DNA of 64,000 bases, from contig NIVC01000905.1 in the NCBI GenBank assembly GCA_002269645.1, positions 186,001 through 250,000 on the forward strand. Reading direction: 5' to 3'. Source of the DNA: Macrostomum lignano. Lineage: Eukaryota. The notes under the pieces were generated by a model. That model was given only the letters and a program-made list of their open reading frames with translations. It searched no databases and had not been told where the DNA came from. A program made the translations under genes and the position numbers. Of this stretch, positions 14,571 to 49,200 are shown in pieces (the stretch's first letter is position 1; each line of letters begins with the position of its first letter).

Positions 14571-15034
14571 AGATGAGAAGTAGACTTCGACTTCGCCTAG
14601 AAAAATTTAGTCTTTTAAAATCAGCAACCTTTACACGGTAGATTTCCTACTCTAAGTAGTATAAAGTACCTAAAAAAGAAGTGTATATAACATAGTAAGC
14701 TCGAGTGAATTAAGCGAGGTCCGTTCACCACCCCACTGTAACCCTGTATACCCGCACTAGCCAGCTAGTGTATTAAAGAATTTGAGCATTTTAGAGAGAG
14801 AGAAGGGTGGGGAGGGAGAGAGAGACAGGCAGACTGTCAGTAGCTATAGCACAATGGACAGTGGATACGTTCGCTGCAGATAGAGTAGCTAACAGAGTAG
14901 TGTGGGTGGGGTATATTGGGTGCGACCGGACCCACCCAGTTCCTAACAATATTTCTGTCAATTTTTCAGAGCTCCTATATTCCAAAAAGAGCCGCCTGTC
15001 TACTATTAAATTATTCAACTATTGTTATTCTATC

Positions 15035-19937: not shown

Positions 19938-20115
19938 ATGGGCAATGCGAACTCAAACGAGCGAACTACAACACTTAGCCGTGATACGTATTTTTTTATT
20001 ACCGAGGATGTGCAGGTGAGAGCCGGCTGCCTGCTTACTACTATCGGTAGTATGGTTTGTTGCAGTTTATAGAGTTCCAGTGATCTAGATAGTTGTCTGA
20101 CTCTGTGTCTGTCTG

Positions 20116-20176
<61 letters not shown>

Positions 20177-20205
20177 CTGTATCACTCTGTCTGTCTGTCT
20201 GTCTG

Positions 20206-20298
<93 letters not shown>

Positions 20299-21778
20299 GT
20301 GTCTGTCTGTCTGTCTGTCTGTGTGTCTGTCTGTCTGTCTGTCTGTGTGTCTGTCTGTCTGTCTATCTCTGTATCACTCTGTCTGTCTGTCTGTCTGTCA
20401 TTCACAGCCCACCCTACCATTCCAGGACCGGCTCCGCCTAGCCGAGAAGCGCCAGGTGAACCTGAGCAGCGAGGGCGAGGACTCTGCGCCATCGGCGGGC
20501 CGGCCCCAGTCGCACAGCCTGGCCGACAGCGTGGCTGACAGCATCCGACAGACCCAGCAGCTGGACCAGCTGCAGCGAGACTACGAGTCCCGCCTGGCCA
20601 AACTAGAAGAGCGGTCCCAGGCTCGATTCCAGTCGGCAGCCGGTCAGTTCTCGGCGGCAGTCAATCGGGTGGAATCGAAATTCATTGACCGGGAGGCGCC
20701 GCCGCCCTGCTGCCAGGCCGAGAAGGAGGCGGTGCGCCAGTGCTACGCCGCCAATGTGCGCTACCCGCTGCGCTGCTCCCAGATGGTCGCCGCGTTTGAG
20801 CAGTGCGTCACCGAACAGCGCAGGGTGAGTCCTGGCTTGGGGTGCACGGAACTTGGCTGGGGGTTGCAGTGCATGGTTCATGCCTCTGAGGCCTGCTGGC
20901 GCCTATCTGTAGCTGGCGCCTCCCTCTGTAGCTGGCGCCTCCCTCTGTAGCTGGCGCCTCCCTCTGTAGCTGGCGCCTCCCTCTGTAGCTGGCGCCTCCC
21001 TCTGTAGCTGGCGCCTCCCTCTGTAGCTGGCGCCCCCTTTCTGTAGCTGGTGCCCCTTCTGTAGCTGGCCGCCCCCTCTGTAGCTGACGCCCCCCTCTGT
21101 AGCTGGCGCTCCCTTCTGTAGCTGGCGCCTCCCTCTGTAGCTGGCGCCCCCCATCTGTAGCTGGCGCCCCCCCTTCTGTAGCTGGCGCCCCCCTTCTGTA
21201 GCTGGCGCCTCCCTCTGTAGCTGGCGCCCCCCTTCTGTAGCTGGCGCCCCCCTTCTGTAGCTGGCGCCTCCCTCTGTAGCTGGCGCCCCCCTTCTGTAGC
21301 TGGCGCCCCCTCTGTAGCTGGCGCCTCCCTCTGTAGCTGGCGCCTCCCTCTGTAGCTGGCGCCTCCTCTGTAGCTGGCGCCTCCCTCTGTAGCTCCTCTC
21401 TGTAGCTGGCGCCCCCTCTGTAGCAGGCGCCCCCTCTGTAGCTGGCGCCCCCCTCTGTAGCTGGCGCCTCCCTCTGTAGCTGGCCGCCCCCCTTCTGTAG
21501 CTGGGACTATCTTCACCATCTAGATTCTCCCATCATCAGCAATATCTTCATCATCCAGTATCTCGCTTAATCTTCTGAATCCCCATCAACCAGAACCGCC
21601 CTTCATCCACAGAATCCACATCATCCAGAATTGACCTTCATTTACAGAATCCTCATCATCCAGAATCACCCATAAATTGATTTGAGTAGATAGTTTATAC
21701 GTTCCGTTTTTACAATTTCAGGCATTCGTAATTCGCCAACGCAAATCGGAAACAGCCAAGGAGGCTGGCTACATGTGA
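19938..21778 (+). CDS. CHCHD3: MICOS complex subunit MIC19/MIC25-like (CHCH domain), 177 aa
   Basis: Exons 19938-20015, 20426-20824, 21722-21778 (TGA), phase 0. N-terminal MGNANS myristoylation-type motif, coiled-coil middle, C-terminal twin CX9C ([22 protein letters not shown]). Confidence 0.85.
20095..20400. repeat. (CTGT)n microsatellite
   Basis: Fills MIC19 intron 1. Confidence 0.95.
20900..21500. repeat. 19-bp minisatellite (CTGGCGCCTCCCTCTGTAG)n
   Basis: Tandem units in MIC19 intron 2. Confidence 0.93.
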
Positions 21779-27738: not shown

Positions 27739-28970
27739 AAGTTATTTAGTTTTTTATACTCATATTTTTTGTTTCAATCCGCATGCACATGTAACAATAC
27801 CTGCACGAATCTTTAGAACATTTTTCCCGAACCTAGGCATACACGCAATCCAGCTGGGATGACAGGATAAATCGTTATTTGGTGAGTGCTAATTTATTCT
27901 GTACTGTTTTTCAGCAACCCGGATCTGCAACAGGTAAAACTGACTAAATTTTGTCGAATGCCTGATGGGAAACATGGTCTGGAATGGATTCGCGGATTTT
28001 TTCCCTATTTGCGATCAGAAAATCCCGGATGCTGGCTTCTCGGAGTCATTCCGCATTGACAGCGTCTGAATTCCTGTGCAATGATTATTCGGCAGCGCTC
28101 CATTTTCAGCACTCAATTCCATTTAGCACTCCATTTCGCACTTTAGATACACGATTCCCAAGGACCCCATTCCCAGGGACAACATTCCCAGGGACACCAT
28201 TCCCAGGGACCCCATTCCCAGGGACCCCATTCCCAGGGGAGTGCGTACACGAACAAAAGTACAGAATCCCGCGCCTAAAATGAAGTCATTATAGCAATGC
28301 TACAGGAGGGCATCTCCCAGTAGAATGGCAATATTCAGCTATCTGCTAAAAGAAATCCATTCTCTGCTGATCATCTGCGTTGCCATGGCGACTGACAAAG
28401 CCGCAGATTCCGGCAGGGAGCGACCTCGCCGAGTACCGGGTGCTGGTAGCGAAGCCAGCCATCGGCAACTACGAGACCTGCGTGAGTCTCTGGATCTGCT
28501 CGCCTCAGCTCAGATCAGCAATCAAGCGGCAGATGGAGGCAGCGTTGCATTGAATGAAATGGGGCCATGCGTTTTAAATTTCTACTGACTACTTTCGCAT
28601 GTCCGCATGGCAACAACTAGGGTCCGAGATCAGGTTACAACTGTGGCCGTCTGAACATGAGAGAGAGAGAGAGAGAGAGAGAGTGAGAGAGCACTCACAT
28701 TACATTTACATCCAACTGTCAATCAGGAGCGACCTGGCCCCTCAGGTGCGATGCCTTGGTTGAGAGGGTGAAAGGGACAAGTGTTTGAATGCCACATTCT
28801 GATAAGTGATCCAGAATGCGAGGGGATACAATGAAAAAGTCGACGGGTCTTGCCACTCGAGTAATGATTGTCATTTAGTAATGATGTTGGCCTGAGTCAC
28901 GTCAACTTATTGGGCGATTATTCGGCTTCTCCCACCTCCGTAGCCGCCCGCGGAATCGCTCAAAAGCGCT

Positions 28971-28984
28971 GTTTCCATGGCAAC
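28971..28984. promoter_or_regulatory. RFX X-box motif GTTTCCATGGCAAC upstream of PAN-TSR gene A (second site GTTGCCATGGCGAC at 28379-28392)
   Basis: 135 nt 5' of ATG 29119, followed by TATA-like CATAAAA near 29016; duplicated at 35707-35720 and 35111-35124. Confidence 0.55.
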
Positions 28985-29118
28985 CAACAAAACAAAGAGA
29001 CGCATCAAGCCGGTGCATAAAACACCTGAGCCCGAGGTGGGAGACGGGCCAGAAGCAGGAGAGAAAAGTTTTGTCTTTTAGCAACACAGCAATCGGCAAC
29101 TTCAGCAAGCACAGCCTG

Positions 29119-30810
29119 ATGGGCCTCTCGGTGGCGACCTTAGTACTCCTGACTGCGGCACGGCTGACCGACGCTTCCACAGTCAGGGAGTTCAACTTCA
29201 ACGCGTCTGACCGTCTGCCGTCGGGAATCGGCGACCCCAACGAGTCCGCGGTCTCAGCCGTGGCGCTGAGTCCGGGCTCCATCAAGCTGGTGGGTCCCGT
29301 GGGGATGAACGCCAGCTGGCTGGGGAGTCTCCAGTGCGCGACCAAGTGCAGGGCGTGGGCTTTCTGCCACGCGTACTACTTCAATACCAGTGCGGGCCTG
29401 TGCCACCTGGCTGACCAGGGACAGTTCGAGACCTACTGGACTGGCAACGGCACGGCTGGGAAAGCCGCCTTCGTCAAGCTGTACCACGGTGAGTGGGTCT
29501 TCTGTCACTCTGTACCACGGTGAGTGGGTCTTCTGTCACTCTGTACCACGGTGAGTGGGTCTTCTGTCACTCTGTACCACGGTGAGTGGGTCTTCTGTCA
29601 CTCTGTACCACGGTGAGTGGGTCTTCTGTCACTCTGTACCGCGGTGAGTGGGTCTTCTGTCACTCTGTACCACGGTGAGTGAGTCTTCTGTCACTCTGTA
29701 CCACGGTGAGTGGGTCTTCTGTCACTCTGTACCACGGTGAGTGGGTCTTTAATCGAGCAGTTTCCTGTATACTTTGATTTATGAAAGCACACCGACTTCT
29801 CCTGCTCAGACATCTGCACCTGGCAGTCCTGGACCAACTGGGCCACCGCCTCTGGTGCGACCGGAGATTCCGACATCTGCAACGCGCTTGTGAATCGAAC
29901 CCGCGTCCGCCAGTGCACCTGCCCAACCGACGAAGGGGCCTCCGTGAGCGGCTGGTGTCAGGGCGCGAAGGACAAAAGCCAGACGCAGGGCAGCTTCATC
30001 AGCTGGTGCCAGTGGTCCGAGTGGGCCACCGACTCGTCCGAAGGCAGCCTGGTCTGCGGGAACTGGAACAGCAGGCACCGGTCCAGGAGCTGCCGCTGCC
30101 CGATTGACAGGCCGCCTGCGACCATCGAGACGGCCGCAGTTGATAGCATCACCCAGGTGAGCTTGAAGATGTTGTTGGATTTAGCTTTTGATTTTGGTTT
30201 TTACGTTGATCGCCAGATTTTAAATTCTAGTAAAATGCAACTGGGATACTTTCAGTAGTATAGCCAATATTGTTATTACCCTTATTCTCCGAAGACTTGG
30301 AACTGGTGCAACTGGGAAGGCTGGAACGAGTGGACGAGTGACAAAGGCTATAAGAAGTCTTGGCACTACGCGAACAACTATCTTGGATGCAACTGGCGGT
30401 TCACTCGCAAGAGAGTCCGCAAGTGCGGCTGCTCGACTGCGATCAGCGCGTCGGCTGGCCCGGAGGTGAGCAGCGAGTTGGACACTGCCTTCACTGCCTG
30501 GTGCGCCTGGGGCAACTGGGGCAACTGGTACCTGTATAAGGACGGCAAAAATAGCCATAATATTATTCGAAAAAAGAGTCGTACTTACGACTGCACCAGG
30601 AACTCGTCAAACAGCTGTTCAGGAGGCCGGTGGGAAAGGCAGACGGGTCATTCATGCCGCTGCTTTGACTGGAGCAGGTGGAGATATTGGCGGCGTTGTC
30701 GTTCCAAGAGAGCCAAATTCAAGACATGTAGATGCAAATATGATGGAGATTTCAATACGGCCAATGTCACCGACTACAGGTGTCGCAAGCGCACCAAGCG
30801 TATGTTTTAG
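29119..30810 (+). CDS. Secreted PAN/apple-domain + thrombospondin type-1 repeat protein, copy A (410 aa)
   Basis: Exons 29119-29488, 29810-30156, 30295-30810 (TAG). Signal peptide MGLSVATLVLLTAARLTDA; PAN cysteine pattern CATKCRAWAFCHAYYFNTSAGLCHL; five TSR-like units with WxxWxxW and RxRxC (WQSWTNW..RVRQC, WCQWSEW..RSRSC, WEGWNEW..RVRKC, WGNWGNW, WSRWRYW). Confidence 0.85.
29479..29746. repeat. 31-bp minisatellite spanning the exon1/intron1 junction (CTGTACCACG|GTGAGTGGGTCTTCTGTCACT)
   Basis: 9 donor-containing units at 31-bp spacing, GT at 29489 to 29737. Confidence 0.95.
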
Positions 30811-31074
30811 CGAACACACAATCCAGTCTGCTAAATATAAACACTGTGTTTCCTTTCTAAATAAGGAAGTCTCTTTTCAAATTGGCATCAATTGCCCGCG
30901 TTTCGTACGGCGACTGTGTATTCAATTACGAGTATACTGATTTTTTTGTCAAAAAGATGTTTTATGATGTCTAAAGGCTCTTTCAATTGAGCCATGCAAT
31001 CACTTGATTGATGGACAAACTCACAATCAGGCCGTCATAACACAAAATCAGCTTCATTTGAATGCGGCTCGTGA

Positions 31075-31520
31075 CATTTGACTGTCAGTGATATTTGACT
31101 GCCAGTGACATTTGACTGCCAGTGACATTTGACTGCCAGTGACATTTGACTGCCAGTGACATTTGACTATCAGTGACATTTGACTATCAGTGACATTTGA
31201 CTGTCAGTGACATTTGACTATCAGTGACATTTGACTGTTAGTGACATTTGACTATCAGTGACATTTGACTGTCAGTGACATTTGACTGTCAGTGACATTT
31301 GACTGTCGGTGACATTTGACTGCCAGTGACATTTGACTATCAGTGACATTTGACTGTCAGTGACATTTGACTATCAGTGACATTTGACTGTCAGTGACAT
31401 TTGACTATCAGTGACATTTGACTGTTAGTGACATTTGACTATCAGTGACATTTGACTGTCAGTGACATTTGACTGTCAGTGACATTTGACTGTCGGTGAC
31501 ATTTGACTGCCAGTGATATT
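31075..31520. repeat. 17-bp minisatellite (GACATTTGACTGTCAGT)n
   Basis: Tandem units downstream of PAN-TSR gene A. Confidence 0.93.
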
Positions 31521-31559
31521 TGATGGCTCATGACAGTCAACAGTCAGCAATAATATGCT

Positions 31560-32430
31560 CTTATTCCCAGCACTCCATTCCCAGCTCTCCATTCCCAGCT
31601 CTCCATTCCCAGCTCTCCATTCCCAGCTCTCCATTCCCAGCACTCCATTCCCAGCTCTCCATTCCCAGCTCTCCATTCCCAGCTCTCCATTCCCAGCTCT
31701 CCATTCCCAGCTCTCCATTCCCAGCTCTCCATTCCCACCCCTCCATTCCCAGCTCTCCATTCCCAGCACTCCATTCCCAGCTCTCCATTCCCACCCCTCC
31801 ATTCCCAGCTCTCCATTCCCAGCTCTCCATTCCCACCCTCCATTCCCAGCTCTCCATTCCCAGCACTCCATTCCCAGGTCTCCATTCCCAGCTCTCCATT
31901 CCCAGCACTCCATTCCCAGCTCTCCATTCCCAGCTCTCCATTCCCAGCTCTCCATTCCCAGCTCTCCATTCCCACCCCTCCATTCCCAGCTCTCCATTCC
32001 CAGCTCTCCATTCCCAGCTCTCCATTCCCACCCCTCCATTCCCAGCTCTCCATTCCCAGCTCTCCATTCCCAGCTCTCCATTCCCAGCTCTCCATTCCCA
32101 GCACTCCATTCCCAGCACTCCATTCCCAGCTCTCCATTCCCAGCTCTCCATTCCCAGCACTCCATTCCCAGCACTCCATTCCCAGCTCTCCATTCCCAGC
32201 TCTCCATTCCCAGCTCTCCATTCCCACCCCTCCATTCCCAGGTCTCCATTCCCAGCTCTCCATTCCCACCCTCCATTCCCAGCACTCCATTCCCAGCTCT
32301 CCATTCCCAGCTCTCCATTCCCAGCACTCCATTCCCAGCTCTCCATTCCCAGCACTCCATTCCCAGCTCTCCATTCCCAGCTCTCCATTCCCAGCTCTCC
32401 CTTCCCAGCTCTCCATTCCCAGCCCTCCAT
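31560..32430. repeat. 14-bp minisatellite (CAGCTCTCCATTCC)n
   Basis: ~60 tandem units. Confidence 0.95.
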
Positions 32431-32509
32431 TCAACATTAACAAAGTGCATTGCCAGCCATTCATGCGTGGGACAATGTCACTGGGAGCGTTTCGATGCCT
32501 GTGTGCAAA

Positions 32510-34800
32510 CGTAGGCCGCACTGCCGACAGTTTCCGAGCCGGCGTCAGCCAGCAGGCAGTCGACGAAACGCCGAGTGCGCGCCTGCCCCCGCCGGGAGGG
32601 TGCCTGCAGCGTCAGCAGCAGCACCTCCTGCACAGGCTGTGGGCAGTACGACTCGGCTCGGATGAAATGGCCTGCCAGCTGGAGTCGCCAGCAGGGTGTC
32701 CGCAACCTGGAAAAACCTGGAAAAACCTGGAAATGCAAAAAAAACCTGGAAAAACCTAAAAATGCAAAAAAACCTGGAAAAACCTGGAAAAACATGGAAA
32801 TGCAAAAAAAACCTGGAAAACCTGGAAATGCAAAAAACCTGAAAACGCCCCAAAACTGAAGAAAAACCTGGAAATAGACCAATCTGGGAGGGGAAACCTG
32901 GAATTATCATTCTTCCCATGATCTGTGTAATGTAAAACTGGAAGAAGACAAAGACAAAGAAGCCAATGTTTGTCTTTCTCTATGAGAAGCTGAGCGTCAT
33001 CGTTCTTACTGTTGGTCGCTGAAGTTCCATTATTTTACGCAACAGATTGTCACCAAGGCTTCCGTGTCGGATCTGGCGAATTTGGAACTGGACAAGGCTA
33101 CTTTGCCAGCAAAGTTAATTGACATTGGATTCGCCGCACGAAAAGAATTGGGTGTCGCTCTTGCTGAGAAGACGATTTCAGAGCAGGACAAGCTGAAATT
33201 CCTTTCGGAATGCAAGCAGTTCTACTGCAAATTGATTGAAAAACTTCTAGAGAAGTCGCCTCTTCGATATTCAATTGTTCGCGGAGCTAGCTCTCTCTCG
33301 CCAACACTCATTTGCAGCTCTCCAGAAGTCAGCCAACAGCGCTTTCGGATGCTACTTACGGACCTCATGGAGTGTCATCGACTACCTGCAGATGAGTGCG
33401 ACCTTGCTTAACGCAGTTTTGGGACTTTTGTGGAGAGTCCAGAGGTTCAGAGAACAATGGCCGCATTTAATGCCGCGAGTGAACGAGTAGACACGCTCTA
33501 CTGGAACCTGCTTCCTGGTGCAGAAGCCACTGCAAGTGCGCTTCATGGCTTGCAGCTAGCAGCCAGGGATGCGCTCTGGAAGCCGATAAGCATGGTGTTG
33601 ATCATGTCACATGGCAATGCCACTGTTGAAAGTGGATTTTCCGTGAACAAGGACATGCTGGTGCCTAACCTCCTGCAGGATTCTTTGGTGTCCCTGCGCC
33701 AAGTCCAGGATACTATAACAACTATAACAGTAGCTTCTATCCAAGAATCTTCTATCCAGTGTAAGAATGGCCAGGCAGCGTTACCGTGATGCCTTGGAGG
33801 AAAAACGAGACGAGGAGAAATCGAAGACAGCGGTCACCGTATCCCAGAAGAGAAAAGCGACTGACGAGATTTTCCGAATCGAACAGGAGCTCGAGCTCGT
33901 GTCGAGGAGTTGCGCAAAAGGCTCGCCTAAGTACATTTGGCAACTGACGACAGTTAGTTACAAGTACTTAAAAAGACCATAATTATTTGCTGAACATTGG
34001 CGAAGCGTTTACTGTCATGCATATTTTGCTTTATTTTCACTTCCATAAATGTCACATTTTATGTCCTATTTTACGAGTTTCAGTTTCGTTCAATGTTAGT
34101 CTTGTAGTTTCAATTGACGGCTCATTGACAATAGCCTGTATATTTTACCTATTTTTTTACTTTCCAATTTTCCACTTATTTGCGCCCTGCAGTGCTGATA
34201 CGAGCTGCTACAGTACGTGGCAACTTTGCTAAACGTTTACTGAATTTTGCATATCTTTTCCGATCATGTCCTCTTTTTCTTTTCGTTGATTGCTCATTGA
34301 CAGTGGCCCATTTTTACTATGAAATATATAATATACAGTTCGTAGTAGGAAACACTAAATCAAGAAAAATCGCTGCGTACATACGTTTCAAAGCTACACC
34401 AAGTAGCAACCTGGAGCTTACTTATTTGAACCTGGAAAAACCTGGAAATTGATATTGAATTTCGCGCGGACACCCTGCGCCAGGCCGGTGCGGCGATAGA
34501 GTGCCGCATTGGTGACTCGCTCGTAGCCGATCTTGAAGGCGGCGCGCAGCAGGCCAGCGTGCGCCTCATCTACCTGCTGTTCGAGTGAATCTGTCAGGAT
34601 CCAGGTCTCGGCGTTGTACAACAGGACGGTCTCGATCACCGCGTGGAACAACGCTGGCCTCTCGTAATCAGGCAGGGCCTAGGACTGCAGGACGGCCCTC
34701 ACGGAACGGAAAACAGCCCAGACAAGTCAACGGCGACATCGCAGGTCCTCGCAAACGTCAGGCACGAGACCGCCGAGGTAGACAAACTGCTGACGGCGCA
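32510..34800 (-). mobile_element. Decayed RTE-like LINE 3' fragment, interrupted by a hAT-like element
   Basis: 32510-32691 and 34478-34800 align with the LINE at 40420-40910 (e.g. GCGTCAGCCAGCAGGCAGTCGACGAAACGCCGAG, CACTCGCTCGTAGCCGATCTTGAA); minus-strand peptides LQLAGHFIRAESYCPQPVQEVLLLTL and AVIETVLLYNAETW. Confidence 0.8.
32692..34477 (+). mobile_element. Non-autonomous hAT-like DNA transposon (1786 bp) with C-terminal transposase remnant
   Basis: Perfect 12-bp TIR CAGGGTGTCCGC (32692-32703) / GCGGACACCCTG (34466-34477); subterminal AACCTGGAAA repeats at both ends; flanked by CGCCAG on both sides; internal frame 33064-33789 with one in-frame TAA (33409) and motif SHGNATVESGFSVNK, resembling the hAT C-terminal dimerisation region. 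Confidence 0.85.
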
Positions 34801-34824
34801 CTCCAAACTGACGGCGAAAATGGA

Positions 34825-35388
34825 CAGCGCTCCATTTTCAGCACTCAATTCCATTTAGCACTCCATTTCGCACTTTAGATACACGATTCCCAAGGACCCC
34901 ATTCCCAGGGACAACATTCCCAGGGACACCATTCCCAGGGACCCCATTCCCAGGGACCCCATTCCCAGGGGAGTGCGTACACGAACAAAAGTACAGAATC
35001 CCGCGCCTAAAATGAAGTCATTATAGCAATGCTACAGGAGGGCATCTCCCAGTAGAATGGCAATATTCAGCTATCTGCTAAAAGAAATCCATTCTCTGCT
35101 GATCATCTGCGTTGCCATGGCGACTGACAAAGCCGCAGATTCCGGCAGGGAGCGACCTCGCCGAGTACCGGGTGCTGGTAGCGAAGCCAGCCATCGGCAA
35201 CTACGAGACCTGCGTGAGTCTCTGGATCTGCTCGCCTCAGCTCAGATCAGCAATCAAGCGGCAGATGGAGGCAGCGTTGCATTGAATGAAATGGGGCCAT
35301 GCGTTTTAAATTTCTACTGACTACTTTCGCATGTCCGCATGGCAACAACTAGGGTCCGAGATCAGGTTACAACTGTGGCCGTCTGAAC

Positions 35389-35422
<34 letters not shown>

Positions 35423-36958
35423 GAGAGCACTCACATTACATTTACATCCAACTGTCAATCAGGAGCGACCTGGCCCCTCAGGTGCGATGCCTTGGTTGAG
35501 AGGGTGAAAGGGACAAGTGTTTGAATGCCACATTCTGATAAGTGATCCAGAATGCGAGGGGATACAATGAAAAAGTCGACGGGTCTTGCCACTCGAGTAA
35601 TGATTGTCATTTAGTAATGATGTTGGCCTGAGTCACGTCAACTTATTGGGCGATTATTCGGCTTCTCCCACCTCCGTAGCCGCCCGCGGAATCGCTCAAA
35701 AGCGCTGTTTCCATGGCAACCAACAAAACAAAGAGACGCATCAAGCCGGTGCATAAAACACCTGAGCCCGAGGTGGGAGACGGGCCAGAAGCAGGAGAGA
35801 AAAGTTTTGTCTTTTAGCAACACAGCAATCGGCAACTTCAGCAAGCACAGCCTGATGGGCCTCTCGGTGGCGACCTTAGTACTCCTGACTGCGGCACGGC
35901 TGACCGACGCTTCCACAGTCAGGGAGTTCAACTTCAACGCGTCTGACCGTCTGCCGTCGGGAATCGGCGACCCAACGAGTCCGCGGTCTCAGCCGTGGCG
36001 CTGAGTCCGGGCTCCATCAAGCTGGTGGGTCCCGTGGGGATGAACGCCAGCTGGCTGGGGAGTCTCCAGTGCGCGACCAAGTGCAGGGCGTGGGCTTTCT
36101 GCCACGCGTACTACTTCAATACCAGTGCGGGCCTGTGCCACCTGGCTGACCAGGGACAGTTCGAGACCTACTGGACTGGCAACGGCACGGCTGGGAAAGC
36201 CGCCTTCGTCAAGCTGTACCACGGTGAGTGGGTCTTCTGTCACTCTGTACCACGGTGAGTGGGTCTTCTGTCACTCTGTACCACGGTGAGTGGGTCTTCT
36301 GTCACTCTGTAACACAGTGAGTGGGTCTTCTGTCACTCTGTACCACGGTGAGTGGGTCTTCTGTCACTCTGTACCGCGGTGAGTGGGTCTTCTGTCACTC
36401 TGTACCACGGTGAGTGGGTCTTCTGTCACTCTGTACCACGGTGAGTGGGTCTTCTGTCACTCTGTACCACGGTGAGTGGGTCTTCTGTCACTCTGTACCA
36501 CGGTGAGTGGGTCTTCTGTCACTCTGTACCACGGTGAGTGGGTCTTTAATCGAGCAGTTTCCTGTATACTTTGATTTATGAAAGCACACCGACTTCTCCT
36601 GCTCAGACATCTGCACCTGGCAGTCCTGGACCAACTGGGCCACCGCCTCTGGTGCGACCGGAGATTCCGACATCTGCAACGCGCTTGTGAATCGAACCCG
36701 CGTCCGCCAGTGCACCTGCCCCACTGACGAAGGGGTCTTCGTGAGCGGCTGGTGTCAGGGCGCGAAGGACAAAAGCCAGACGCAGGGCAGCTTCATCAGC
36801 TGGTGCCAGTGGTCCGAGTGGGCCACCGACTCGTCCGAAGGCAGCCTGGTCTGTGGGAACTGGAACAGCAAGCACCGGTCCAGGAGCTGCCGCTGCCCGA
36901 TTGACAGGCCGCCTGAGACCATCGAGACGGCCGCAGTTGAGAACATCACCCAGGTGAG
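34825..36958. repeat. Segmental duplication, copy B (near-identical to 28093-30161)
   Basis: See copy A; includes an 11-unit version of the 31-bp junction array (GT at 36224 to 36534). Confidence 0.95.
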
Positions 36959-37547
36959 TTGACAGTGCCGTGATTTGTTAAAACCAATCACAGCAGTCCT
37001 AATGCTTTCAAGTACAAGTGCAATTTTTTTACGATCTGTAAAGGCATGGCACTGGTGCAACTGGAAAAGCTGGAGCGTTTGGACAGACGATCGCGGGTAC
37101 TCTAAGTGGTGGTTGTACCACCGCAGCTACTTCTATACGCCCAGGTGTGACACGCGATTTACGAGAAGGCGCAGCAGGCAATGCGGCTGCTCAGGTAAAG
37201 AGGCTGCTGCTCAGGCTGGTTCGAATGTTAGCCAGGAGGTGAGCACCATCTACTCAGCCTGGTGCCCTTGGCTGAGCTGGGATAGCTGGTACCGCGACTG
37301 CTCGGTAGGTCGAATAATGTGCAAGAGGACCCGCACAGTGATTGACTGCTTTGTGAATACATCGACCAGCGCCTTGCCGGCAGGCAGCGCACAGGACTAT
37401 CAATACGACACTGCTAAGTGTGGCTGGGGCAAGTGGAAGAACTACTGGCTCAGCGGCTGTCGGTGGTGGCGTGGCAAGAGGCGGTTTTGCTTGTGCTCCA
37501 ATGAAAATTACCGGACAAAGTCAGTCTTCGAGTACAAATGCCGCTAA
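35855..37547 (+). pseudogene. PAN/apple + TSR protein, copy B: frameshifted in exon 1 as sequenced (pseudogene or homopolymer error), intact and divergent last exon
   Basis: Exons 35855-36223, 36607-36953, 37044-37547 (TAA). CCC at 35971-35973 versus CCCC at 29235-29238 shifts the frame to a TGA at 36002. Exon 3 is open for 167 codons with WKSWSVW..RSRQC, WLSWDSW, WGKWKNYW. Confidence 0.7.
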
Positions 37548-40266
37548 TTGATAGAAATCACAGCTTATAGCGTGCATATAACAGTGTTAAGCTTCTTGAA
37601 CTGATTAATGACTAATAAATATACCTCCATTGAGATTTATGGATTCGGCCTTCTTCAGACCTTGATTGGAGGCTGCTTGGGCCTCAGAGCATATCTTATA
37701 GAAATCAATCACTTGCATGTCCATGTAGGAATCATCATAATTGAATTAAATGATGGGTTTCGACCTTTCGGCCCCCTTGTGGGGAAGCCTTCGGGCCTCA
37801 GGTCTCAGAAATAAATCAATTAGAGTCCTGGCCCCCCACTCCTGTCAGATGGTCAGCCCCATGGTAGCTTGATCGTGTGGCGAGCAGTCTAGGTCCTATA
37901 GCTAAGAGAGGGACAGCGAGAGACAAGCAGGGAGAATTTTGAAGGTAGAAATTAGTTAACCCGCAGACTAAGCTAACTCGCTGCCACCAGCCCGTACGTC
38001 CTGGCTCACCACACCGGGACTCTCGAAATCGGGCTTCCACTTACCTGCCAACTAGTGTCTTTTTGCTGTCAATCTCGAAGTCATAGCCGATGTTAAGGGA
38101 CACTGCTGGGACTAGATCGCATTGGCCATGCAGGTACAGAGGGGACTTGTGCAGGGGATTCTTGCAGTGGCGAGACTATGGGGTAGCTACATGTACTATT
38201 ACATTGCTAAATACGAAGAATTGTACTTTTTGCCTTCAACGCGCCAACTAGCCTCTCATGGCGCTGATGATAGACTAACTCGAGCTTCAGAGACCGCATG
38301 ATTCATTACCCGAGCCGCTTGGCGAACCTAGAGTGCACAGAGTACATCTCTAGCGCCGATTTTGCACTATTGGCGATTTTGCTCACTGAATTGATAGAAT
38401 GATCGACTGAGAACTGGCTTGCCATTGGTCCACTGTGACCGGCGCCTACTAGCTTAGCCACTCATCTGAGCCATCGGCGAACAAAGAAATAAAACCGATA
38501 AAAATAACTGTCAGATTTAACCTTCTCCTTATCACTTCACACTTCAGATTGAATTTGGAGTTTCAGACTACTAGCAGTATTATTGAATGATTTCTGCCTC
38601 AGCAACAGCACTGCTGAACAAAATGAGCAAAAGTGTGCGCCTAATCCAGCTACTGAAACCGGGGACAGATAAGGATCATCCAATCAAGCAAGTCTAGGTA
38701 GCCTCTCACCCAACCAATCAGAAACTCAACAGCCGGAGACCAGGTAATCCACAGTGATCGAATCGGCTTAGTGCTTCGCAGCTGTAGACCCGGGATGATG
38801 CTGATGTCACAACCTTTGCAGGTAGCTAGCAGGTGATGCTCTTAACTTTGATGTTAACTACTGATGACCGGGGGAATTGTCCTTGATGATGATGGGGGGA
38901 AGTCGCAATCCGGGGATCAAGAAACGACGATCAATTCCTGGCCGGTGCAGCCGTGTCAGCCCGACGCAAGAAAGGTTGCAGTCCGAGCGGGCCAAAAAAC
39001 ACCGGTTTAAATAGCCGCCAACTGGACCACAGTTTGTTATAATGGAACACGTCGATTCTGATTGGCTGAGCCGATTTGTTAAAATGAGCGTCGAATTTTC
39101 TGATTGGCTAAGCTTGTTGCTACCCAGAATCACGTGACCGGGAGATTCTATCAGTTCCCTCGGGGTCGTAAAAACATGACAGGTGCGGCCATAAATCAAT
39201 CAAAATCGCAACAAAATAATTTATAACTTTCCGCGTAGGATTGACAAAAATTAATGAAAAAATATACATTAGAAAGCTCTTATTAAGTAGAAAGTGAAGA
39301 TAATGAAGAGAAATCGCTAATCGCTAATCCCAAAGTACTTTTAGGGGTAAAACGCATAGCTGTCAAAGCTGTCACACGCTTGAGTGAACCCGAACAATAG
39401 GCTCTGACCTCATAAATCTTGATGGCCTGTCAAAAATGATGAGAAAAAAGCTACCGCTCGCATCCTCTCAGACCATCTGGCGCCCGCCTCAACACTGAGT
39501 GAGGCGCAGGTGGCTGTCAGACCAGCTTCGAAAGCGATGATTTATGACCCAAAAAGCTGCGCCTATGTTATTATGACTACTGTATGACCAAACATTATAT
39601 CTAGTATAGATTCTATGACAATTCGCAGAAAAAGGATAAAAAATGCCCATTGTCCATTGTTAGTAGGCTAGTAAGTTTAGAGCCCATGTGCTAGCGCGGG
39701 ATTTGGAAAAAAGTGCGTCCTCATCATAAATATATTAAAATGTTATACTTTAAGTTTATCTAATTTAAGCCAGTTTTCTACGTTTTCAAATCATCAATTT
39801 TCCATGCTCCAATGGAGTAAATTTATCATCCCTTTTGAGGGAACGTTCGTTTAACGGTAAGGTGGGTATGAGATGTTCCACATAATTTGGCAGACAGAAA
39901 TTGAGTGAGAAGTCATTGAGTGAATAGTCAAGCTCTATCTTAACATTTAACATGTCTACTGCTAGTGTCGTGTCGCGTTTTGCATTGGCCTTACAATTTT
40001 AAATTAGGCTTAAGAAGCCCCTATTCCTTGATCTTAACCTCAACTTTAAACTTAAAATCTGACAATTAAGAAATAGCCTTGGTAAATCTAAATAGCTCGT
40101 AATAGTTTACAGTTATTTGCTATTTGTATTCGGTATTGTGTGTACTCTCAGATTTTATTCATCTTATAACTTATTAGGTATATGTTAGCCAGTTTAATAT
40201 TTTTACTTAGTGGTGGATGCAGTGGCAGCCGCCCCCCTTTGTCATGGCTGGACTTGCATATAAGGG

Positions 40267-40327: not shown

Positions 40328-41680
40328 AACAACAACAACAATAGAATGCGCATTTAGCGTCACAGGGCGCGCTTCAAGGCCAGGTCGCGGATGAACGCCA
40401 CGCCGCCGGCCGAATCCGGGGCGCCCGCGTCAGCCAGCAGGCAGTCGACGAAACGCCGAGTGCGCGCCTGCCCCCCGCCGGTAGGGTGCCTGCAGCGTTA
40501 GCAGCAGCACCTCCTGCACCGGCTCTGGGCAGTACGACTCGGCTCGAACGATGTGGCCTGCCAGCTGGAGTCGCCGACGGCGCAGCGGGTCGCTTGGACG
40601 GAGCAGGCCGGCGCAGCGATACAAAGCCGCGTTGGTCACTCGCTCGTAGCCGATCTTGAAAGCGGCGCGCAGCAGGCCAGCGTGCGCCGCGTCAACTTGC
40701 TGTCAGCGTCCAGGTCTCGGCGTTGTACAGCAGGACGGTCTAGATCACCGCCTGGAACAACGCCGCCCTCTGGCGGTCAGGTAGGGCCTCGGACTGCAGG
40801 ACCGCCCTCAAAGAACGAAAGGCAGCCCAGGCAAGCCCACGGCGACGCCGAAAATCCTCGCTGACGCCGGGAACCAGACCGCCGAGGTAGACGAACTGCT
40901 GACAACGTGGAAGCTGTCGCCTGTCCATCAGCGCCTCGGCACAAAATCGCAGCTTCGATGGCGTCCGGCACGCAGAGCACGACGGTCTTCGTTGACCACA
41001 AGGTCGACACTCGTCGCAACAACAACTAGCTTGTCCAGTTGTCGCTGGGCGCCCTCGACCGTTGAGGACAGCAGGGCGAGATTGTCGGCGTAGCCAAGCA
41101 CGCTGGGCCGCCTCTCCGGTTGACGTCGACCCAAGCGTCGCCCCAACAGAAAGCCGTCGACGTTGGTAGTAAGAGCGGTCCGCAGCACCCAGTCAAGCAC
41201 CAGAACGAACAGGCGAACAGGAACGGCGCAAGTGTATCTCTCTGAAGCACCCCGGAGGATGTCTCAAAGAAGTCCGATAGGTTGTCCGGTGTTGAAACAG
41301 CAGTTTCGTATCACGGTAAATCACCATGATAGCGGAAATCAGCTGCTCTGGCACGTTGTACGCACGGAGCACTTTTGGGAGCACAGACCGGACGACCGAG
41401 TCGAATGCCTTCTTGAAATCTATACGCTCGTAGTTAAAGATAACAATCAGGATCGACTGGCGTATCCGCGCTTCCTCGATGACTCGCCGAAAGCCAGGAT
41501 CTGCGTCACTGTGCCACGATGGGACCGGAAGTCATTCTGCTCAGGACGCAGGTACGGATCCAGCACGGGCTGCAACCGCGATAACAGCATCCGGTTGAAC
41601 AGCTTCGCAGCGCAGCTAGGACTGAAGGCAGTGGTGCCCAACTTCTTAAGAACTGCGACGATGTGCGCCGTGGTCCATTC
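40268..41680 (-). mobile_element. 5'-truncated RTE-like LINE (reverse transcriptase C-terminal half) with (TTG)n tail
   Basis: Frameshifted minus-strand peptides: AAKLFNRMLLSRLQPVLDPYLRPEQNDFR, LQRDTLAPFLF (QGDTL motif), LGYADNLALLS (YADD motif), CQQFVYLGG, RRRRLQLAGHIVR; (CAA)n at 40268-40340 is the 3' tail. Confidence 0.88.
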
Positions 41681-46242: not shown

Positions 46243-49200
46243 ATGGGCCGCGGCAGTTTGGCCATCGCAGTGTCGGCAGCCTGCCTGCTAATTGGCTATT
46301 CAATCGCTATTGGTCCCTACGATTGGATGCACAGGGACAATTTCGATTTGATCATGGAGAAAATGATCAGCGTGGATGAAAAGAATTGCAAAGAGATGAG
46401 CATTGACTCGCTGCGGCTGCCAGTGAACACTCTGGGTCAGGTGCCCAAGTTTAACGTTCTGCCTCAGATTGTGGTATTCCCCAATCGAACTAAGCTGATC
46501 CATCTGCACAACATGGCGCTGAACCGAGGCTACTTCTTCTCCTATATCCTGCAGCGATTGAACGAGTCTGAATTTGATTTTCCTTTGTTGCCAGGATTCA
46601 TGTACTATTACCTGAGCTCAGCTGCTACCGTGACCTCAGCGCCTGGCCTGCTCAATGGTTCATCCATTCTGTTTGACACTCACTGCCAGTACGCCAACTG
46701 GTTTCCTACTATACTCAATTTTAACCAGACTCTGCCGCTGTTTGGACCGAAGGCCTGGCGGCTGGACGACTATCAGGATAATGTTAACTGGCTGCGCGAG
46801 CCCACCAATAACACTATTATAGTGGAGGACCTGGGCGCCGGGCCGAATCACAACTACACGGCTAGATGGCACCGGCTTAATCCGCTGTTCTTGTACGATC
46901 CCGATCCTAGGATTAAGATTGACTTCATACCAGATCTCAGGTAGAACTGCCCCTTTTTCTAACGCAGATTTTTTAATGAATCTGTTAGAGTACATTTGGT
47001 AGCTTAGATAGAGGGTTGAAGAGCTTTAGGATAAAGGATTGAGCAGCTTCAAGATAAAGGATTGAGCAGCTTCAGGATAGAGAATTGAGCAGCTTCAGGA
47101 TAAAGGATTGAGCAGCTTCAAGATAAAGGATTGAGCAGCTTCTGGATAAAGGATTGAGCAGCTTCTGGATAAAGGATTGAGCAGCTTCAGGATAAATGAT
47201 TGAGCAGCTTCAGGATAAAGGATTGAGCAGCTTCTGGATAAAGGATTGAGCAGCTTCTGGATAAATGATTGAGCAACTTCTGGATAAAGGATTGAGCAGA
47301 TTTTATATTTGAGAATGACAATTAATCCGATTTACTAGACTACTTTACTAGTTTGTAAAGTAAGTAGATAAAGTAGTAGGTAGATGCGAGAATGTACTGA
47401 CAAATTTGTATCGCAGTGTATATCATTCTGTCACCTTGCTGTCACCCCGCCCGCGCAGAACGGACAACCAAGCCAAGCACCAGTACGACTACAACATCTA
47501 CAACTCTAGCTCCCCCGGCGTGATGGGCAAAACTCCCAACGTGACTCGAAGGTTCTTCGGCCCGCCATCGCCTGGCATTCAAGAGAATTATCATCCTGTG
47601 TACTTTAGTAGGCCCTACTTCGACTGCGGCAGGACCAACATGTGGCTAGTCAGCAGTGTTGGCCCCGTTATCGACTTTATGAGGCGCTACAGTATCGAGA
47701 CTAACCTGCGCAGTCCCAAGTGAGTGCCTGTCTTGCTGGCTGTTTATTGGATAGAGATGGGAAAGATGAGAGATGGAGATGAGAGAGAGGGAGACAGGAG
47801 AGAGGCAGATAGGAGAGAGGGAGAGAGGCAGATAAGAGAGAGGGAGAAAGGAGAGAGGCAGATAGGAGAGAGGGAGAGAGGCAGATAAGAGAGAGGGAGA
47901 AAGGAGAGAGGCAGATAGGAGAGAGGGAGAGAGGCAGATAAGAGAGAGGGAGACAGGAGAGAGGCAGATAAGAGAGAGGGAGACAGGAGAGAGGCAGATA
48001 AGAGAGAGGGAGACAGGAGAGAGGCAGATAGGAGAGAGGGAGATAAGAGAGAGGGAGACAGGAGAGAGGCAGATAGGAGAGAGGCAGATAAGAGAGAGGG
48101 AGACAGGAGAGAGGCAGATAGGAGAGAGGAGACATGAGAGAGGGAGACAGGAGAGAGGCAGATAAGAGAGAGGGAGACAGGAGAGAGGCAGATAAGAGAG
48201 GGAGACAGGAGAGAGGCAGATAAGAGAGAGGGAGATAAGAGAGAGGCAGATAGGAGAGAGGGAGACATGAGAGAGGGAGACAGGAGAGAGGCAGATAAGA
48301 GAGAGGGAGACAGGAGAGAGGCAGATAAGAGAGGGAGACAGGAGAGAGGGAGATAAGAGAGAGGCAGATAGGAGAGAGGGAGACATGAGAGAGGGAGACA
48401 GGAGAGAGGGAAGATAAGAGAGAGGGAGATAAAGATATATAAAAATGAAGCCGACAAAAATGACTCTCCGCCGATATGTATCGTCAATAACTTTCTAGCA
48501 CTATGCATGGCAAGTGAAAATTGAACTAAGCTTTGAAAAGGGTAGCTGTACGGCCTGTGTGAGCGTGTGCGCTTGCTTTCTCAAGTGTCTGCGGAATGGG
48601 CTTGACTGCTTGCTTGCCTCCTCGGTGCTCAATTTAGTTTGCTAATTGCCATCGTGGTCTGCAGCTGCCTAATTCAATAAATTAGGCCAATCAAACATCC
48701 ATTGATGTTTGAAAGGCTAGCTCCAACCACCTTTTGTCGGGCTTGTTTGCAGTTAAGTCTGCTTGAATGGGTAAATGGCTGTGCGCGTATCTGGCGGCAC
48801 TGACTCATAGGACTTATATAGCTTGTCTGATGTAGCTTCCTGCTTCTCTTTTGGCTATTTTCTCCCAAATCCTAAGTTACTGAGCCAGCGTCCTAGATCC
48901 TCAGTTGCTGGGCCAGCCCCCCAGATCCTCAGTTGCTGGGCCAGCCCCCCAGATCCTCAGTTGCTGGGCCAGCCCCCCAGATCCTCAGTTGCTGGGCCAG
49001 CCCCCCAGATCCTCAGTTGCTGGGCCAGTCCCCAGATCCTCAGTTGCTGGGCCAGCCCCCCAGATCCTCAGTTGCTGGGCCAGTCCCCAGATCCTCAGTT
49101 GCTGGGCCAGCCCCCCAGATCCTCAGTTGCTGGGCCAGTCCCCAGATCCTCAGTTGTTGGGCCAGCAAGCACTCCAAATCCTCAGTTTCTGGGCTAGCCT

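What the first reader, a model, noticed from the sequence alone, without database searches (positions are those of the whole stretch)
28093..37547. Tandem PAN-TSR gene pair with a shared constant front half and a highly divergent cationic last exon
Seen: ~1 kb of upstream DNA, exon 1, intron 1 and the 5' part of exon 2 match by eye apart from repeat-number changes, a few repeat-unit variants and one 1-bp indel. The 3' ~235 bp of exon 2 carry 9 substitutions (6 non-synonymous: A>V, S>F, R>K, A>E, D>E, S>N; 3 synonymous). Similarity stops at the exon-2 donor. Intron 2 is unalignable and exon 3 is only roughly 35-40% identical in protein, yet both copies keep three WxxWxxW TSR scaffolds and are K/R/W/C-rich. 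Inference: an old paralog pair whose promoter, signal peptide, PAN domain and first TSRs were recently homogenised (gene conversion or partial re-duplication) while the terminal exon escapes. This is a constant/variable layout expected of recognition, adhesion, antimicrobial or reproductive proteins.
Basis: partly seen in the sequence, partly recalled or inferred. Interest (0 to 1): 0.78.

Follow-up and report, generated by a model that had tools for sequence, protein, structure and literature searches.

The report
Tandem gene pair, half homogenised
Two neighbouring, anciently duplicated genes for a secreted tryptophan/cysteine-rich protein have had their promoter and first two exons recently overwritten to near identity while the last exon stayed very different. 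This is an ordinary case of partial gene conversion, and the second copy carries a frameshift as assembled.

Summary
A 28093-30156 and B 34825-36953 form a 2.07-kb direct repeat covering 1.03 kb of upstream DNA, exon 1, intron 1 and exon 2. The first 1.83 kb has no substitutions outside a 31-bp minisatellite. Similarity ends within 5 bp of the exon-2 donor. The two third exons are collinear homologues (36% identity, E = 1e-28) with saturated synonymous sites.

It shifts the frame after codon 40 and gives a TGA at codon 50. As assembled, B is a pseudogene, or the assembly has a homopolymer error.

The PAN label is weak in Pfam but supported through real PAN modules of other proteins. The TSR label rests only on motifs; Pfam finds no TSP_1 and the structure models failed. 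No relatives of the TSR-like half were found in very large protein libraries, and the window has no third copy.

Best explanation: old tandem paralogues of an orphan secreted protein in a spiralian-like animal genome, homogenised at the 5' end by interlocus gene conversion in at least two steps. The "constant/variable recognition" reading has no support. Interest is low to moderate.

The parts
28093..30156 (+). Copy A of the homogenised block: 1026 bp upstream DNA, exon 1, intron 1, exon 2
34825..36953 (+). Copy B of the homogenised block
28093..29924 (+). Young tract (pairs with B 34825-36721): zero substitutions outside the minisatellite
29925..30156 (+). Older tract (pairs with B 36722-36953): 9 substitutions in 232 bp (3.9%), ending at the exon-2 donor
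29119..29488 (+). Gene A exon 1: ATG, signal-peptide-like N-terminus, N-glycosylation sequons, PAN/apple-like module with 4 Cys; ends in phase 1
29810..30156 (+). Gene A exon 2: two TSR-like Trp/Arg-ladder modules; acidic (pI 5.2)
30295..30810 (+). Gene A exon 3 with stop codon: three further Trp/Arg-ladder modules, net charge +23, pI 9.9
35855..36223 (+). Gene B exon 1, 369 nt; frameshifted as assembled
35971..35973 (+). CCC run in B where A has CCCC (29235-29238): 1-bp deletion, frameshift after codon 40
36002..36004 (+). Premature TGA (codon 50) produced by the frameshift in B
36607..36953 (+). Gene B exon 2
37044..37547 (+). Gene B exon 3 with stop codon: net charge +16, pI 9.5, 36% identical to exon 3 of A
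29479..29749 (+). 31-bp minisatellite, 8.7 units. Each unit is the last 10 nt of exon 1 plus the first 21 nt of intron 1, so the 5' splice site is repeated
36214..36546 (+). The same minisatellite in B, 10.7 units
30157..30294 (+). Intron 2 of A (138 bp, 34% GC), not alignable to intron 2 of B (36954-37043, 90 bp)
34481..34802 (-). LINE-like retroelement fragment ending about 23 bp left of the B block. It marks the left homology break
   Evidence: 81.5% identical to 40604-40903; weak RVT_1 hit on the longer copy

Best explanation
Two same-strand tandem paralogues lie 6.7 kb apart. Each has three exons and encodes a secreted protein of about 400 aa. Exon 1 carries a signal peptide and a PAN/apple-like module. 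Exon 2 carries two TSR-like Trp/Arg-ladder modules. The strongly basic last exon carries three more. The duplication is old: the third exons are collinear homologues with saturated synonymous sites, and mainly the Trp and Cys scaffold is conserved.

The 2.07-kb interval from about 1 kb upstream of the ATG to the exon-2 donor has since been overwritten by interlocus (non-allelic) gene conversion, in at least two steps. An older event left 3.9% divergence in the last 232 bp of exon 2. A very recent event left 0 substitutions over 28093-29924. Both ends of the block sit where homology was already broken. On the left there is a retroelement fragment in B. On the right there is the unalignable intron 2. 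Tracts that need homology to extend would be expected to stop at such points.

Copy B has a 1-bp deletion in exon 1 inside the youngest tract. It is therefore either a newly made pseudogene or a homopolymer error in the assembly; I rate these about equally likely.

The function is inferred, not shown. I propose an extracellular adhesive or matrix-type protein. The PAN module would bind carbohydrate or protein. The cationic Trp/Arg ladders would bind polyanionic ligands such as sulfated glycans.
For: Block limits and two-tier divergence: (Fisher p = 8.9e-9). Old paralogy of exon 3: BLASTP E = 1e-28 at 36% identity; pS 0.83, dN 0.57, nucleotide identity 52%; 13 of 15 Trp and 11 of 13 Cys conserved against about 27% of the other residues. 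No relic of older 5' exons and no third copy in the window. Left edge about 23 bp from a retroelement fragment. Right edge within 5 bp of the exon-2 donor. GC3 is 0.84 in exons 1-2 and 0.67-0.70 in exon 3, the direction expected from GC-biased conversion. Intact GT-AG splice sites and compatible phases in both copies. PAN: sub-threshold PAN_1 hit, apple domains of T. gondii MIC4 as best PDB sequence match, and alignment to real PAN_1 modules of a Macrostomum lignano protein. TSR-like: a profile of the 8 modules retrieves only TSR domains from 177,635 PDB sequences. Charge split between exons. Mosaic divergence of tandem paralogues through gene conversion is well documented (PMC3966223; bioRxiv 10.1101/2025.10.29.685298).
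Against: No orthologous locus or second genome could be examined, so conversion cannot be separated phylogenetically from a recent partial duplication; PMC3966223 gives this same caution. There are no reads, so assembly error cannot be excluded. The GC3 difference rests on few codons and could reflect amino-acid composition. The TSR assignment fails Pfam and both structure models are unusable (pLDDT 29.6 and 47.1). The function has no direct evidence, and there are no expression data.
Confidence: 0.62

Rival explanations
1. There was a recent partial segmental duplication. About 2.07 kb of gene A's 5' half was copied and landed in front of a pre-existing exon 3B, creating a chimeric gene. No conversion between two full paralogues was involved.
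For: Sharp left edge next to a retroelement fragment. Partial duplications with unique terminal exons are common and mimic conversion (PMC3966223, fog-2/ftr-1). No relic of an older B 5' half was found.
Against: The right edge would have to fall by chance within 5 bp of the exon-2 donor, in phase, about 90 bp upstream of a homologous exon 3. Exon 3B is an ancient homologue of exon 3A, so an older duplication is needed anyway. The two divergence tiers (0% and 3.9%) need two events.
Confidence: 0.17
2. This is an assembly artefact. The B 5' block is a false duplication or chimeric join in a very repeat-rich region, and the 1-bp, (GA)n and minisatellite length differences are consensus errors.
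For: All differences in the 1.83-kb tract are length changes in a homopolymer, a microsatellite and a minisatellite, with no substitutions. 40% of the window is tandem repeat.
Against: The last 232 bp carry 9 true substitutions, so the copies are distinct sequences. Arrays such as the 4.4-kb 32-bp minisatellite imply a long-read assembly, in which a 2-kb repeat 6.7 kb apart would lie within single reads (inference). There are no N gaps. Both copies are followed by their own spliceable intron 2 and exon 3.
Confidence: 0.08
3. The locus belongs to a constant/variable system in which a homogenised N-terminal half is combined with diversifying cationic last exons, for recognition, antimicrobial or reproductive roles.
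For: The layout shows an identical front and a 36%-identical back with a conserved Trp/Cys scaffold and high positive charge.
Against: There are only two copies and one is frameshifted. No family members were found in 5.8 billion or 1.84 billion protein libraries, nor in metagenome contigs. Exon 3 divergence is simply old (saturated dS) with no measurable excess of dN.
Confidence: 0.07

Closest known systems
fog-2 / ftr-1 tandem paralogues of Caenorhabditis elegans (PMC3966223)
   Same: They are same-orientation neighbours. Homology starts a short way upstream of the ATG and covers the first exons and introns, while the terminal exon differs. Gene conversion continues in the shared part and can repair or spread premature stops.
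   Different: In fog-2 the terminal exon is unrelated sequence recruited after a partial duplication, and the shared part is 28% diverged at synonymous sites. Here the terminal exons are ancient homologues and the shared part is 0-3.9% diverged.
Human fetal globin genes HBG1/HBG2
   Same: A tandem pair whose 5' roughly 1.5 kb is nearly identical while the 3' part is more diverged. A simple-sequence repeat in an intron lies near the tract end.
   Different: The globin 3' parts are still closely similar. Here the 3' exon is only 36% identical in protein.
Thrombospondin type-1 repeat (TSR; Pfam TSP_1 PF00090), e.g. BAI1, properdin, thrombospondin-1
   Same: A WxxWxxW strand is followed by a Cys and an RxRxRxC strand, which are the elements of the Trp/Arg ladder. 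TSR domains are the only PDB sequences retrieved by the module profile.
   Different: There is no Pfam hit. The Cys spacing differs (C-x-W...C...RxRxRxCxC, about 4 Cys per module). There is no CxxS/TCxxG O-fucosylation motif. The fold is not confirmed.
PAN/apple domain (Pfam PAN_1 PF00024), e.g. T. gondii MIC4 and Macrostomum lignano WSC-PAN proteins
   Same: The four-Cys core C-x3-C-x5-C-x11-C is present. The module is 38% identical over 42 aa to real PAN_1 modules.
   Different: It scores 17.8 and 20.2 bits, below the 21.4-bit gathering score, and only profile positions 26-58 of 76 are matched.

Membership tests
PAN/apple domain (PF00024) | Pfam PAN_1 score at or above the gathering threshold (21.4 bits) | tested here: not met
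   17.8 bits (A) and 20.2 bits (B, frame repaired), residues 72-104, profile positions 26-58 of 76
PAN/apple domain (PF00024) | Sequence homology to proven PAN modules | tested here: met
   Exhaustive HMMER hits P0001-P0003 at query residues 44-107. Pairwise E = 5e-8 to modules of P0003, which Pfam calls PAN_1 at 99.5 bits. MIC4 apple domains are the best PDB sequence match, E 0.06-0.09
PAN/apple domain (PF00024) | Conserved disulfide core (four Cys) | tested here: met
   C73, C77, C83 and C95 align with the Cys of MIC4 and P0003 modules
Thrombospondin type-1 repeat (PF00090 and clan) | Pfam match to TSP_1 or related models | tested here: not met
   No hit at E <= 10 for either protein or for any of 9 single modules
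Thrombospondin type-1 repeat (PF00090 and clan) | WxxWxxW strand plus RxRxR strand (Trp/Arg ladder) | tested here: met
   Five modules per protein. The module profile retrieves only TSR chains from PDB sequences: 7r84 E = 0.057, 1w0r, 9u62, 7yyk. These E-values are not individually significant
Thrombospondin type-1 repeat (PF00090 and clan) | Canonical six-Cys pattern with CSxTCG / CxxS/TCxxG motif | tested here: not met
   No C..[ST]C motif in either protein. Modules have about 4 Cys, with one Cys before the Trp strand and a CxC after the Arg strand
Thrombospondin type-1 repeat (PF00090 and clan) | Three-stranded TSR fold | tested here: inconclusive
   AlphaFold2 models have pLDDT 29.6 (whole protein) and 47.1 (single module with a 9-row alignment). 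They are too poor for a fold search
Interlocus gene conversion between tandem paralogues | Tract of identity significantly longer than expected from the flanking divergence | tested here: met
   0 of 1561 vs 9 of 232 substitutions, p = 8.9e-9. Beyond the donor the sequence is unalignable
Interlocus gene conversion between tandem paralogues | Paralogues demonstrably older than the identical tract | tested here: met
   Exon 3 is homologous (E = 1e-28) with pS 0.83, i.e. saturated
Interlocus gene conversion between tandem paralogues | Species-wise rather than locus-wise grouping of the converted part in orthologous loci | not testable with these tools
   No related eukaryotic genome or orthologue could be retrieved
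Constant/variable diversified effector or receptor families | Multiple variable exons or copies, and an excess of non-synonymous change in the variable part | tested here: not met
   Only two copies in the window and none elsewhere. dN/dS cannot be measured in exon 3 because of saturation, and is 0.51 in the exon-2 tail

The most novel reading that the evidence does not exclude
The pair could be the visible part of a lineage-specific family of secreted proteins built from a new 4-Cys 'mini-TSR' module (C-x-W-x-x-W-x-x-W ... C ... RxRxRxCxC). In this family the front half (PAN plus two modules) would be kept identical by conversion, while cationic terminal exons diversify. More variable exons would lie elsewhere in the genome, serving in adhesion, immunity or reproduction.
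Probability: 0.08. Interest if true: 0.6.

Novelty: new member of a known kind. Interest (0 to 1): 0.27.

Why it matters
The locus is a clean, well-delimited example of mosaic divergence in a tandem pair. It shows 0%, 3.9% and saturated divergence in three adjacent segments, and the tract ends lie at pre-existing homology breaks. It is useful mainly as an annotation warning. Gene trees built from the 5' and 3' halves would give opposite ages, and copy B must not be annotated as intact without checking the C-run. The protein itself is an orphan with an unusual TSR-like module, which could interest people working on invertebrate secreted adhesive or matrix proteins. Nothing here opens a long-standing question.

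Tried and rejected
1. Homologue searches:
- Protein A against 5.8 billion proteins gave nothing.
- Exhaustive HMMER against 1.84 billion representatives gave only PAN-repeat proteins plus two spurious repeat proteins.
- Exon 3B alone gave nothing.
- A metagenome contig scan with the A+B alignment gave nothing.

2. Structure: AlphaFold2 on the whole protein and on one module with the internal-repeat alignment both gave low confidence. I did not run a fold search because the matches would be meaningless.

4. Rfam found no RNA family in the window.

5. Rejected readings:
- The 93% match between 32538-32689 and 40423-40575 is not an extension of the duplication. It is a shared retroelement tail.
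- B's frameshift cannot be rescued by a downstream donor of the minisatellite. The TGA at codon 50 lies inside exon 1.
- Template switching by the adjacent LINE is unlikely to have made the block. The orientation is wrong and the block includes promoter DNA (inference).
- Exon 3B is not unrelated recruited sequence. It is a collinear homologue of exon 3A.

6. The organism could not be named. The neighbour gene at 46243-46944 has its best named relatives in molluscs at 45-46%. The closest PAN modules are from a flatworm and an annelid. I therefore say only 'spiralian-like animal'.
Full report
**Context**

The window is animal nuclear DNA. It encodes:
- a receptor-type tyrosine phosphatase (fn3 and Y_phosphatase exons, 521-12553, + strand)
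- an LHFPL tetraspan protein (14807-15478, + strand)
- a MIC19-like exon (20093-20950, + strand)
- an EF-hand protein (59483-59896, - strand)

40.4% of the window is tandem repeat. There are no N gaps and no Rfam families. Another gene in the window, at 46243-46944, has its best named relatives in molluscs at 45-46% identity. The closest PAN modules come from a flatworm and an annelid. The source is therefore probably a spiralian invertebrate, but I could not name it.

**The observation**

Repeat finding, BLAST and a global alignment agree. A 28093-30156 and B 34825-36953 form a direct repeat. Identity rises from about 33% to 97-100% at 28093/34825. It collapses just after the exon-2 donor; only the splice consensus 'gtgag' is shared beyond it.

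Within 28093-29924 the copies differ only by length changes:
- +4 bp in a (GA)n run in B
- a 1-bp deletion in B
- +62 bp in B, which is two units of a 31-bp minisatellite
- three variant minisatellite units

There is no substitution in 1561 non-minisatellite bases.

The next 232 bp (29925-30156) hold nine substitutions. Clustering gives Fisher p = 8.9e-9.

The third exons are 35-36% identical in protein. No third copy of any exon exists in the window.

**Gene models**

| Copy | Exon 1 | Exon 2 | Exon 3 (with stop) |
|---|---|---|---|
| A | 29119-29488 | 29810-30156 | 30295-30810 |
| B | 35855-36223 | 36607-36953 | 37044-37547 |

All introns are GT-AG and the phases are compatible. Gene A encodes 410 aa.

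**The frameshift in copy B**

This is the main new finding. The '1-bp indel' lies in the coding part of exon 1 of B. A has CCCC at 29235-29238 and B has CCC at 35971-35973. The frame shifts after codon 40 and a TGA follows at 36002-36004.

No downstream donor of the minisatellite can rescue this, because the stop lies inside exon 1. The first in-frame ATG after the lesion would give a protein without a signal peptide. As assembled, B cannot make the protein.

The lesion sits in the tract that has no substitutions at all. It is therefore either very young or a homopolymer consensus error. I rate these about equally likely; only reads can decide.

**The protein**

- The N-terminus (MGLSVATLVLLTAARLTDA) looks like a signal peptide. 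This is by inspection only, as no predictor was available.
- **PAN module.** Exon 1 carries five N-x-S/T sequons and a four-Cys module. Pfam scores this module as PAN_1 just below threshold, at 17.8 and 20.2 bits against 21.4. Its best PDB sequence matches are the apple domains of T. gondii MIC4, at E = 0.06-0.09. It aligns at 38% over 42 residues (pairwise E = 5e-8) with modules of a Macrostomum lignano protein that Pfam calls PAN_1 at 99.5 bits. I accept it as a divergent PAN/apple domain.
- **Trp/Arg-ladder modules.** Exons 2 and 3 hold five modules of the form C-x-W-x-x-W-x-x-W ... C ... R-x-R-x-R-x-C-x-C.
  - A profile of the modules retrieves only four of 177,635 distinct PDB sequences. 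All four are TSR domains: BAI1, properdin (two entries) and thrombospondin-1. Their E-values are 0.057-5.8.
  - Pfam finds no TSP_1 in the proteins or in any single module.
  - The canonical CxxS/TCxxG motif is absent.
  - Both AlphaFold models are unusable, with pLDDT 29.6 and 47.1.
  - 'TSR-like' is therefore a motif-level statement, not a demonstrated membership.
- **Composition.** Each mature protein has 26 Cys, an even number. Exons 1-2 are neutral to acidic (pI 7.6 and 5.2). Exon 3 is strongly basic, with pI 9.9 and net charge +23 in A, and pI 9.5 and +16 in B.
- **Relatives.** No relative of the TSR-like half exists in the 5.8-billion or 1.84-billion protein libraries, nor in metagenome contigs.

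**History**

The third exons are collinear homologues (E = 1e-28). Their proportion of synonymous differences is 0.83, which is saturated. dN is 0.57 and nucleotide identity is 52%. 13 of 15 Trp and 11 of 13 Cys are conserved, against about 27% of the other residues. The paralogues are therefore old, and both were under structural constraint for most of that time.

The 5' block is young and has two tiers, 0% and then 3.9% divergence. The dN/dS of 0.51 in the second tier rests on nine changes and says nothing.

The block is bounded on both sides by breaks in homology:
- On the left, a LINE-like fragment (34481-34802, - strand, 81.5% identical to 40604-40903) ends about 23 bp from the B edge. 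Nothing upstream of A recurs anywhere in the window.
- On the right, intron 2 is unalignable (138 bp in A, 90 bp in B).

No relic of an older B 5' half is present. GC3 is 0.84 in exons 1-2 and 0.67-0.70 in exon 3, the direction expected under GC-biased conversion; this is weak evidence.

The simplest account is repeated interlocus gene conversion over the only interval where the two genes still had continuous homology. The 31-bp minisatellite lies 175 bp from the end of the youngest tract and might be where breaks start; this is inference only.

The pattern is well known. The review PMC3966223 describes C. elegans col-12/col-13 and fog-2/ftr-1. It notes that conversion is commoner between close, same-orientation paralogues and can include introns. 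A recent model treats 'mosaic divergence in tandem paralogues' explicitly (bioRxiv 10.1101/2025.10.29.685298). The same review warns that partial duplication can mimic conversion. I keep that as the main rival. It is weakened by the in-phase coincidence of the right edge with the exon-2 donor, by the ancient homology of exon 3B, and by the two tiers.

**Function (inferred)**

The protein is probably a secreted adhesive or matrix-type protein. PAN/apple modules bind carbohydrates or proteins, and basic Trp/Arg-ladder modules in TSR proteins bind heparin-like polyanions (established knowledge of those families). Cationic K/R-rich regions and TSRs occur in flatworm adhesive proteins (PMC6410801). 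That is an analogy only, because no homology was found.

The idea of a constant/variable recognition system has no support from copy number, relatives or substitution pattern.

**Verdict**

This is a real but ordinary feature. It is a new instance of partial gene conversion in a tandem pair of orphan genes, and one copy is frameshifted as assembled.

Noticed in passing
window 29479-29749 and 36214-36546: The 31-bp minisatellite starts 10 nt before the end of exon 1, so each unit carries a copy of the 5' splice site (CACG|GTGAGT). There are 8.7 units in A and 10.7 in B. Only the first donor gives an open frame, because read-through meets a TGA in the second unit.
   Followed up: partly
window 1-64000: 40.4% of the window is tandem repeat (TRF score >= 100), with 63 arrays of period >= 10. 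One is a 4.4-kb array of a 32-bp unit at 6234-10621, which lies between the fn3 (4207-4644) and phosphatase (10659-11267) coding ORFs of the tyrosine phosphatase gene.
   Followed up: partly
window 28154-28238, 31563-32432, 51498-52006: Several unrelated-looking minisatellites share the core ATTCCCAG: consensus units ATTCCCAGGGACCCC, ATTCCCAGCTCTCC and AATCCCTATTCCCAGATCCCAT. They may have a common origin.
   Followed up: no
window 521-12553 (+), 14807-15478 (+), 20093-20950 (+), 59483-59896 (-): Neighbouring genes are a receptor-type tyrosine phosphatase (fn3 plus Y_phosphatase), an LHFPL tetraspan protein, a MIC19/CHCHD3-like exon and a calmodulin-like EF-hand protein with a Gly-rich tail.
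   Followed up: partly
window 46243-46944 and nearby + strand ORFs (49512-50270, 51148-51543): The 233-aa ORF at 46243-46944 starts with a hydrophobic N-terminus. It has no Pfam domain. Its relatives are 45-55% identical, and the named ones are molluscs. The 49512-50270 ORF also has no Pfam domain. Whether the nearby + strand ORFs belong to the same gene was not tested.
   Followed up: partly
window 32478-32882 (-), 34418-34802 (-), 40430-41641 (-), 33064-33789 (+): Degraded transposable-element fragments lie in the spacer and downstream of copy B. Three are pieces of one LINE-like family, with a weak RVT_1 hit at 41447-41641. There are also two ORFs resembling the C-terminal part of a hAT-type transposase; this is by eye only, and Pfam found nothing.
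   Followed up: partly
window 30811-31210 and 37548-37947: A canonical AATAAA lies 67 nt after the stop codon of copy B (37614). None lies within 400 nt after the stop codon of copy A.
   Followed up: no
window 29119-30156 vs 30295-30810 and 37044-37547: Third-position GC is 0.84 in exons 1-2 but 0.67-0.70 in both third exons. Intron 2 is only 34-38% GC.
   Followed up: partly
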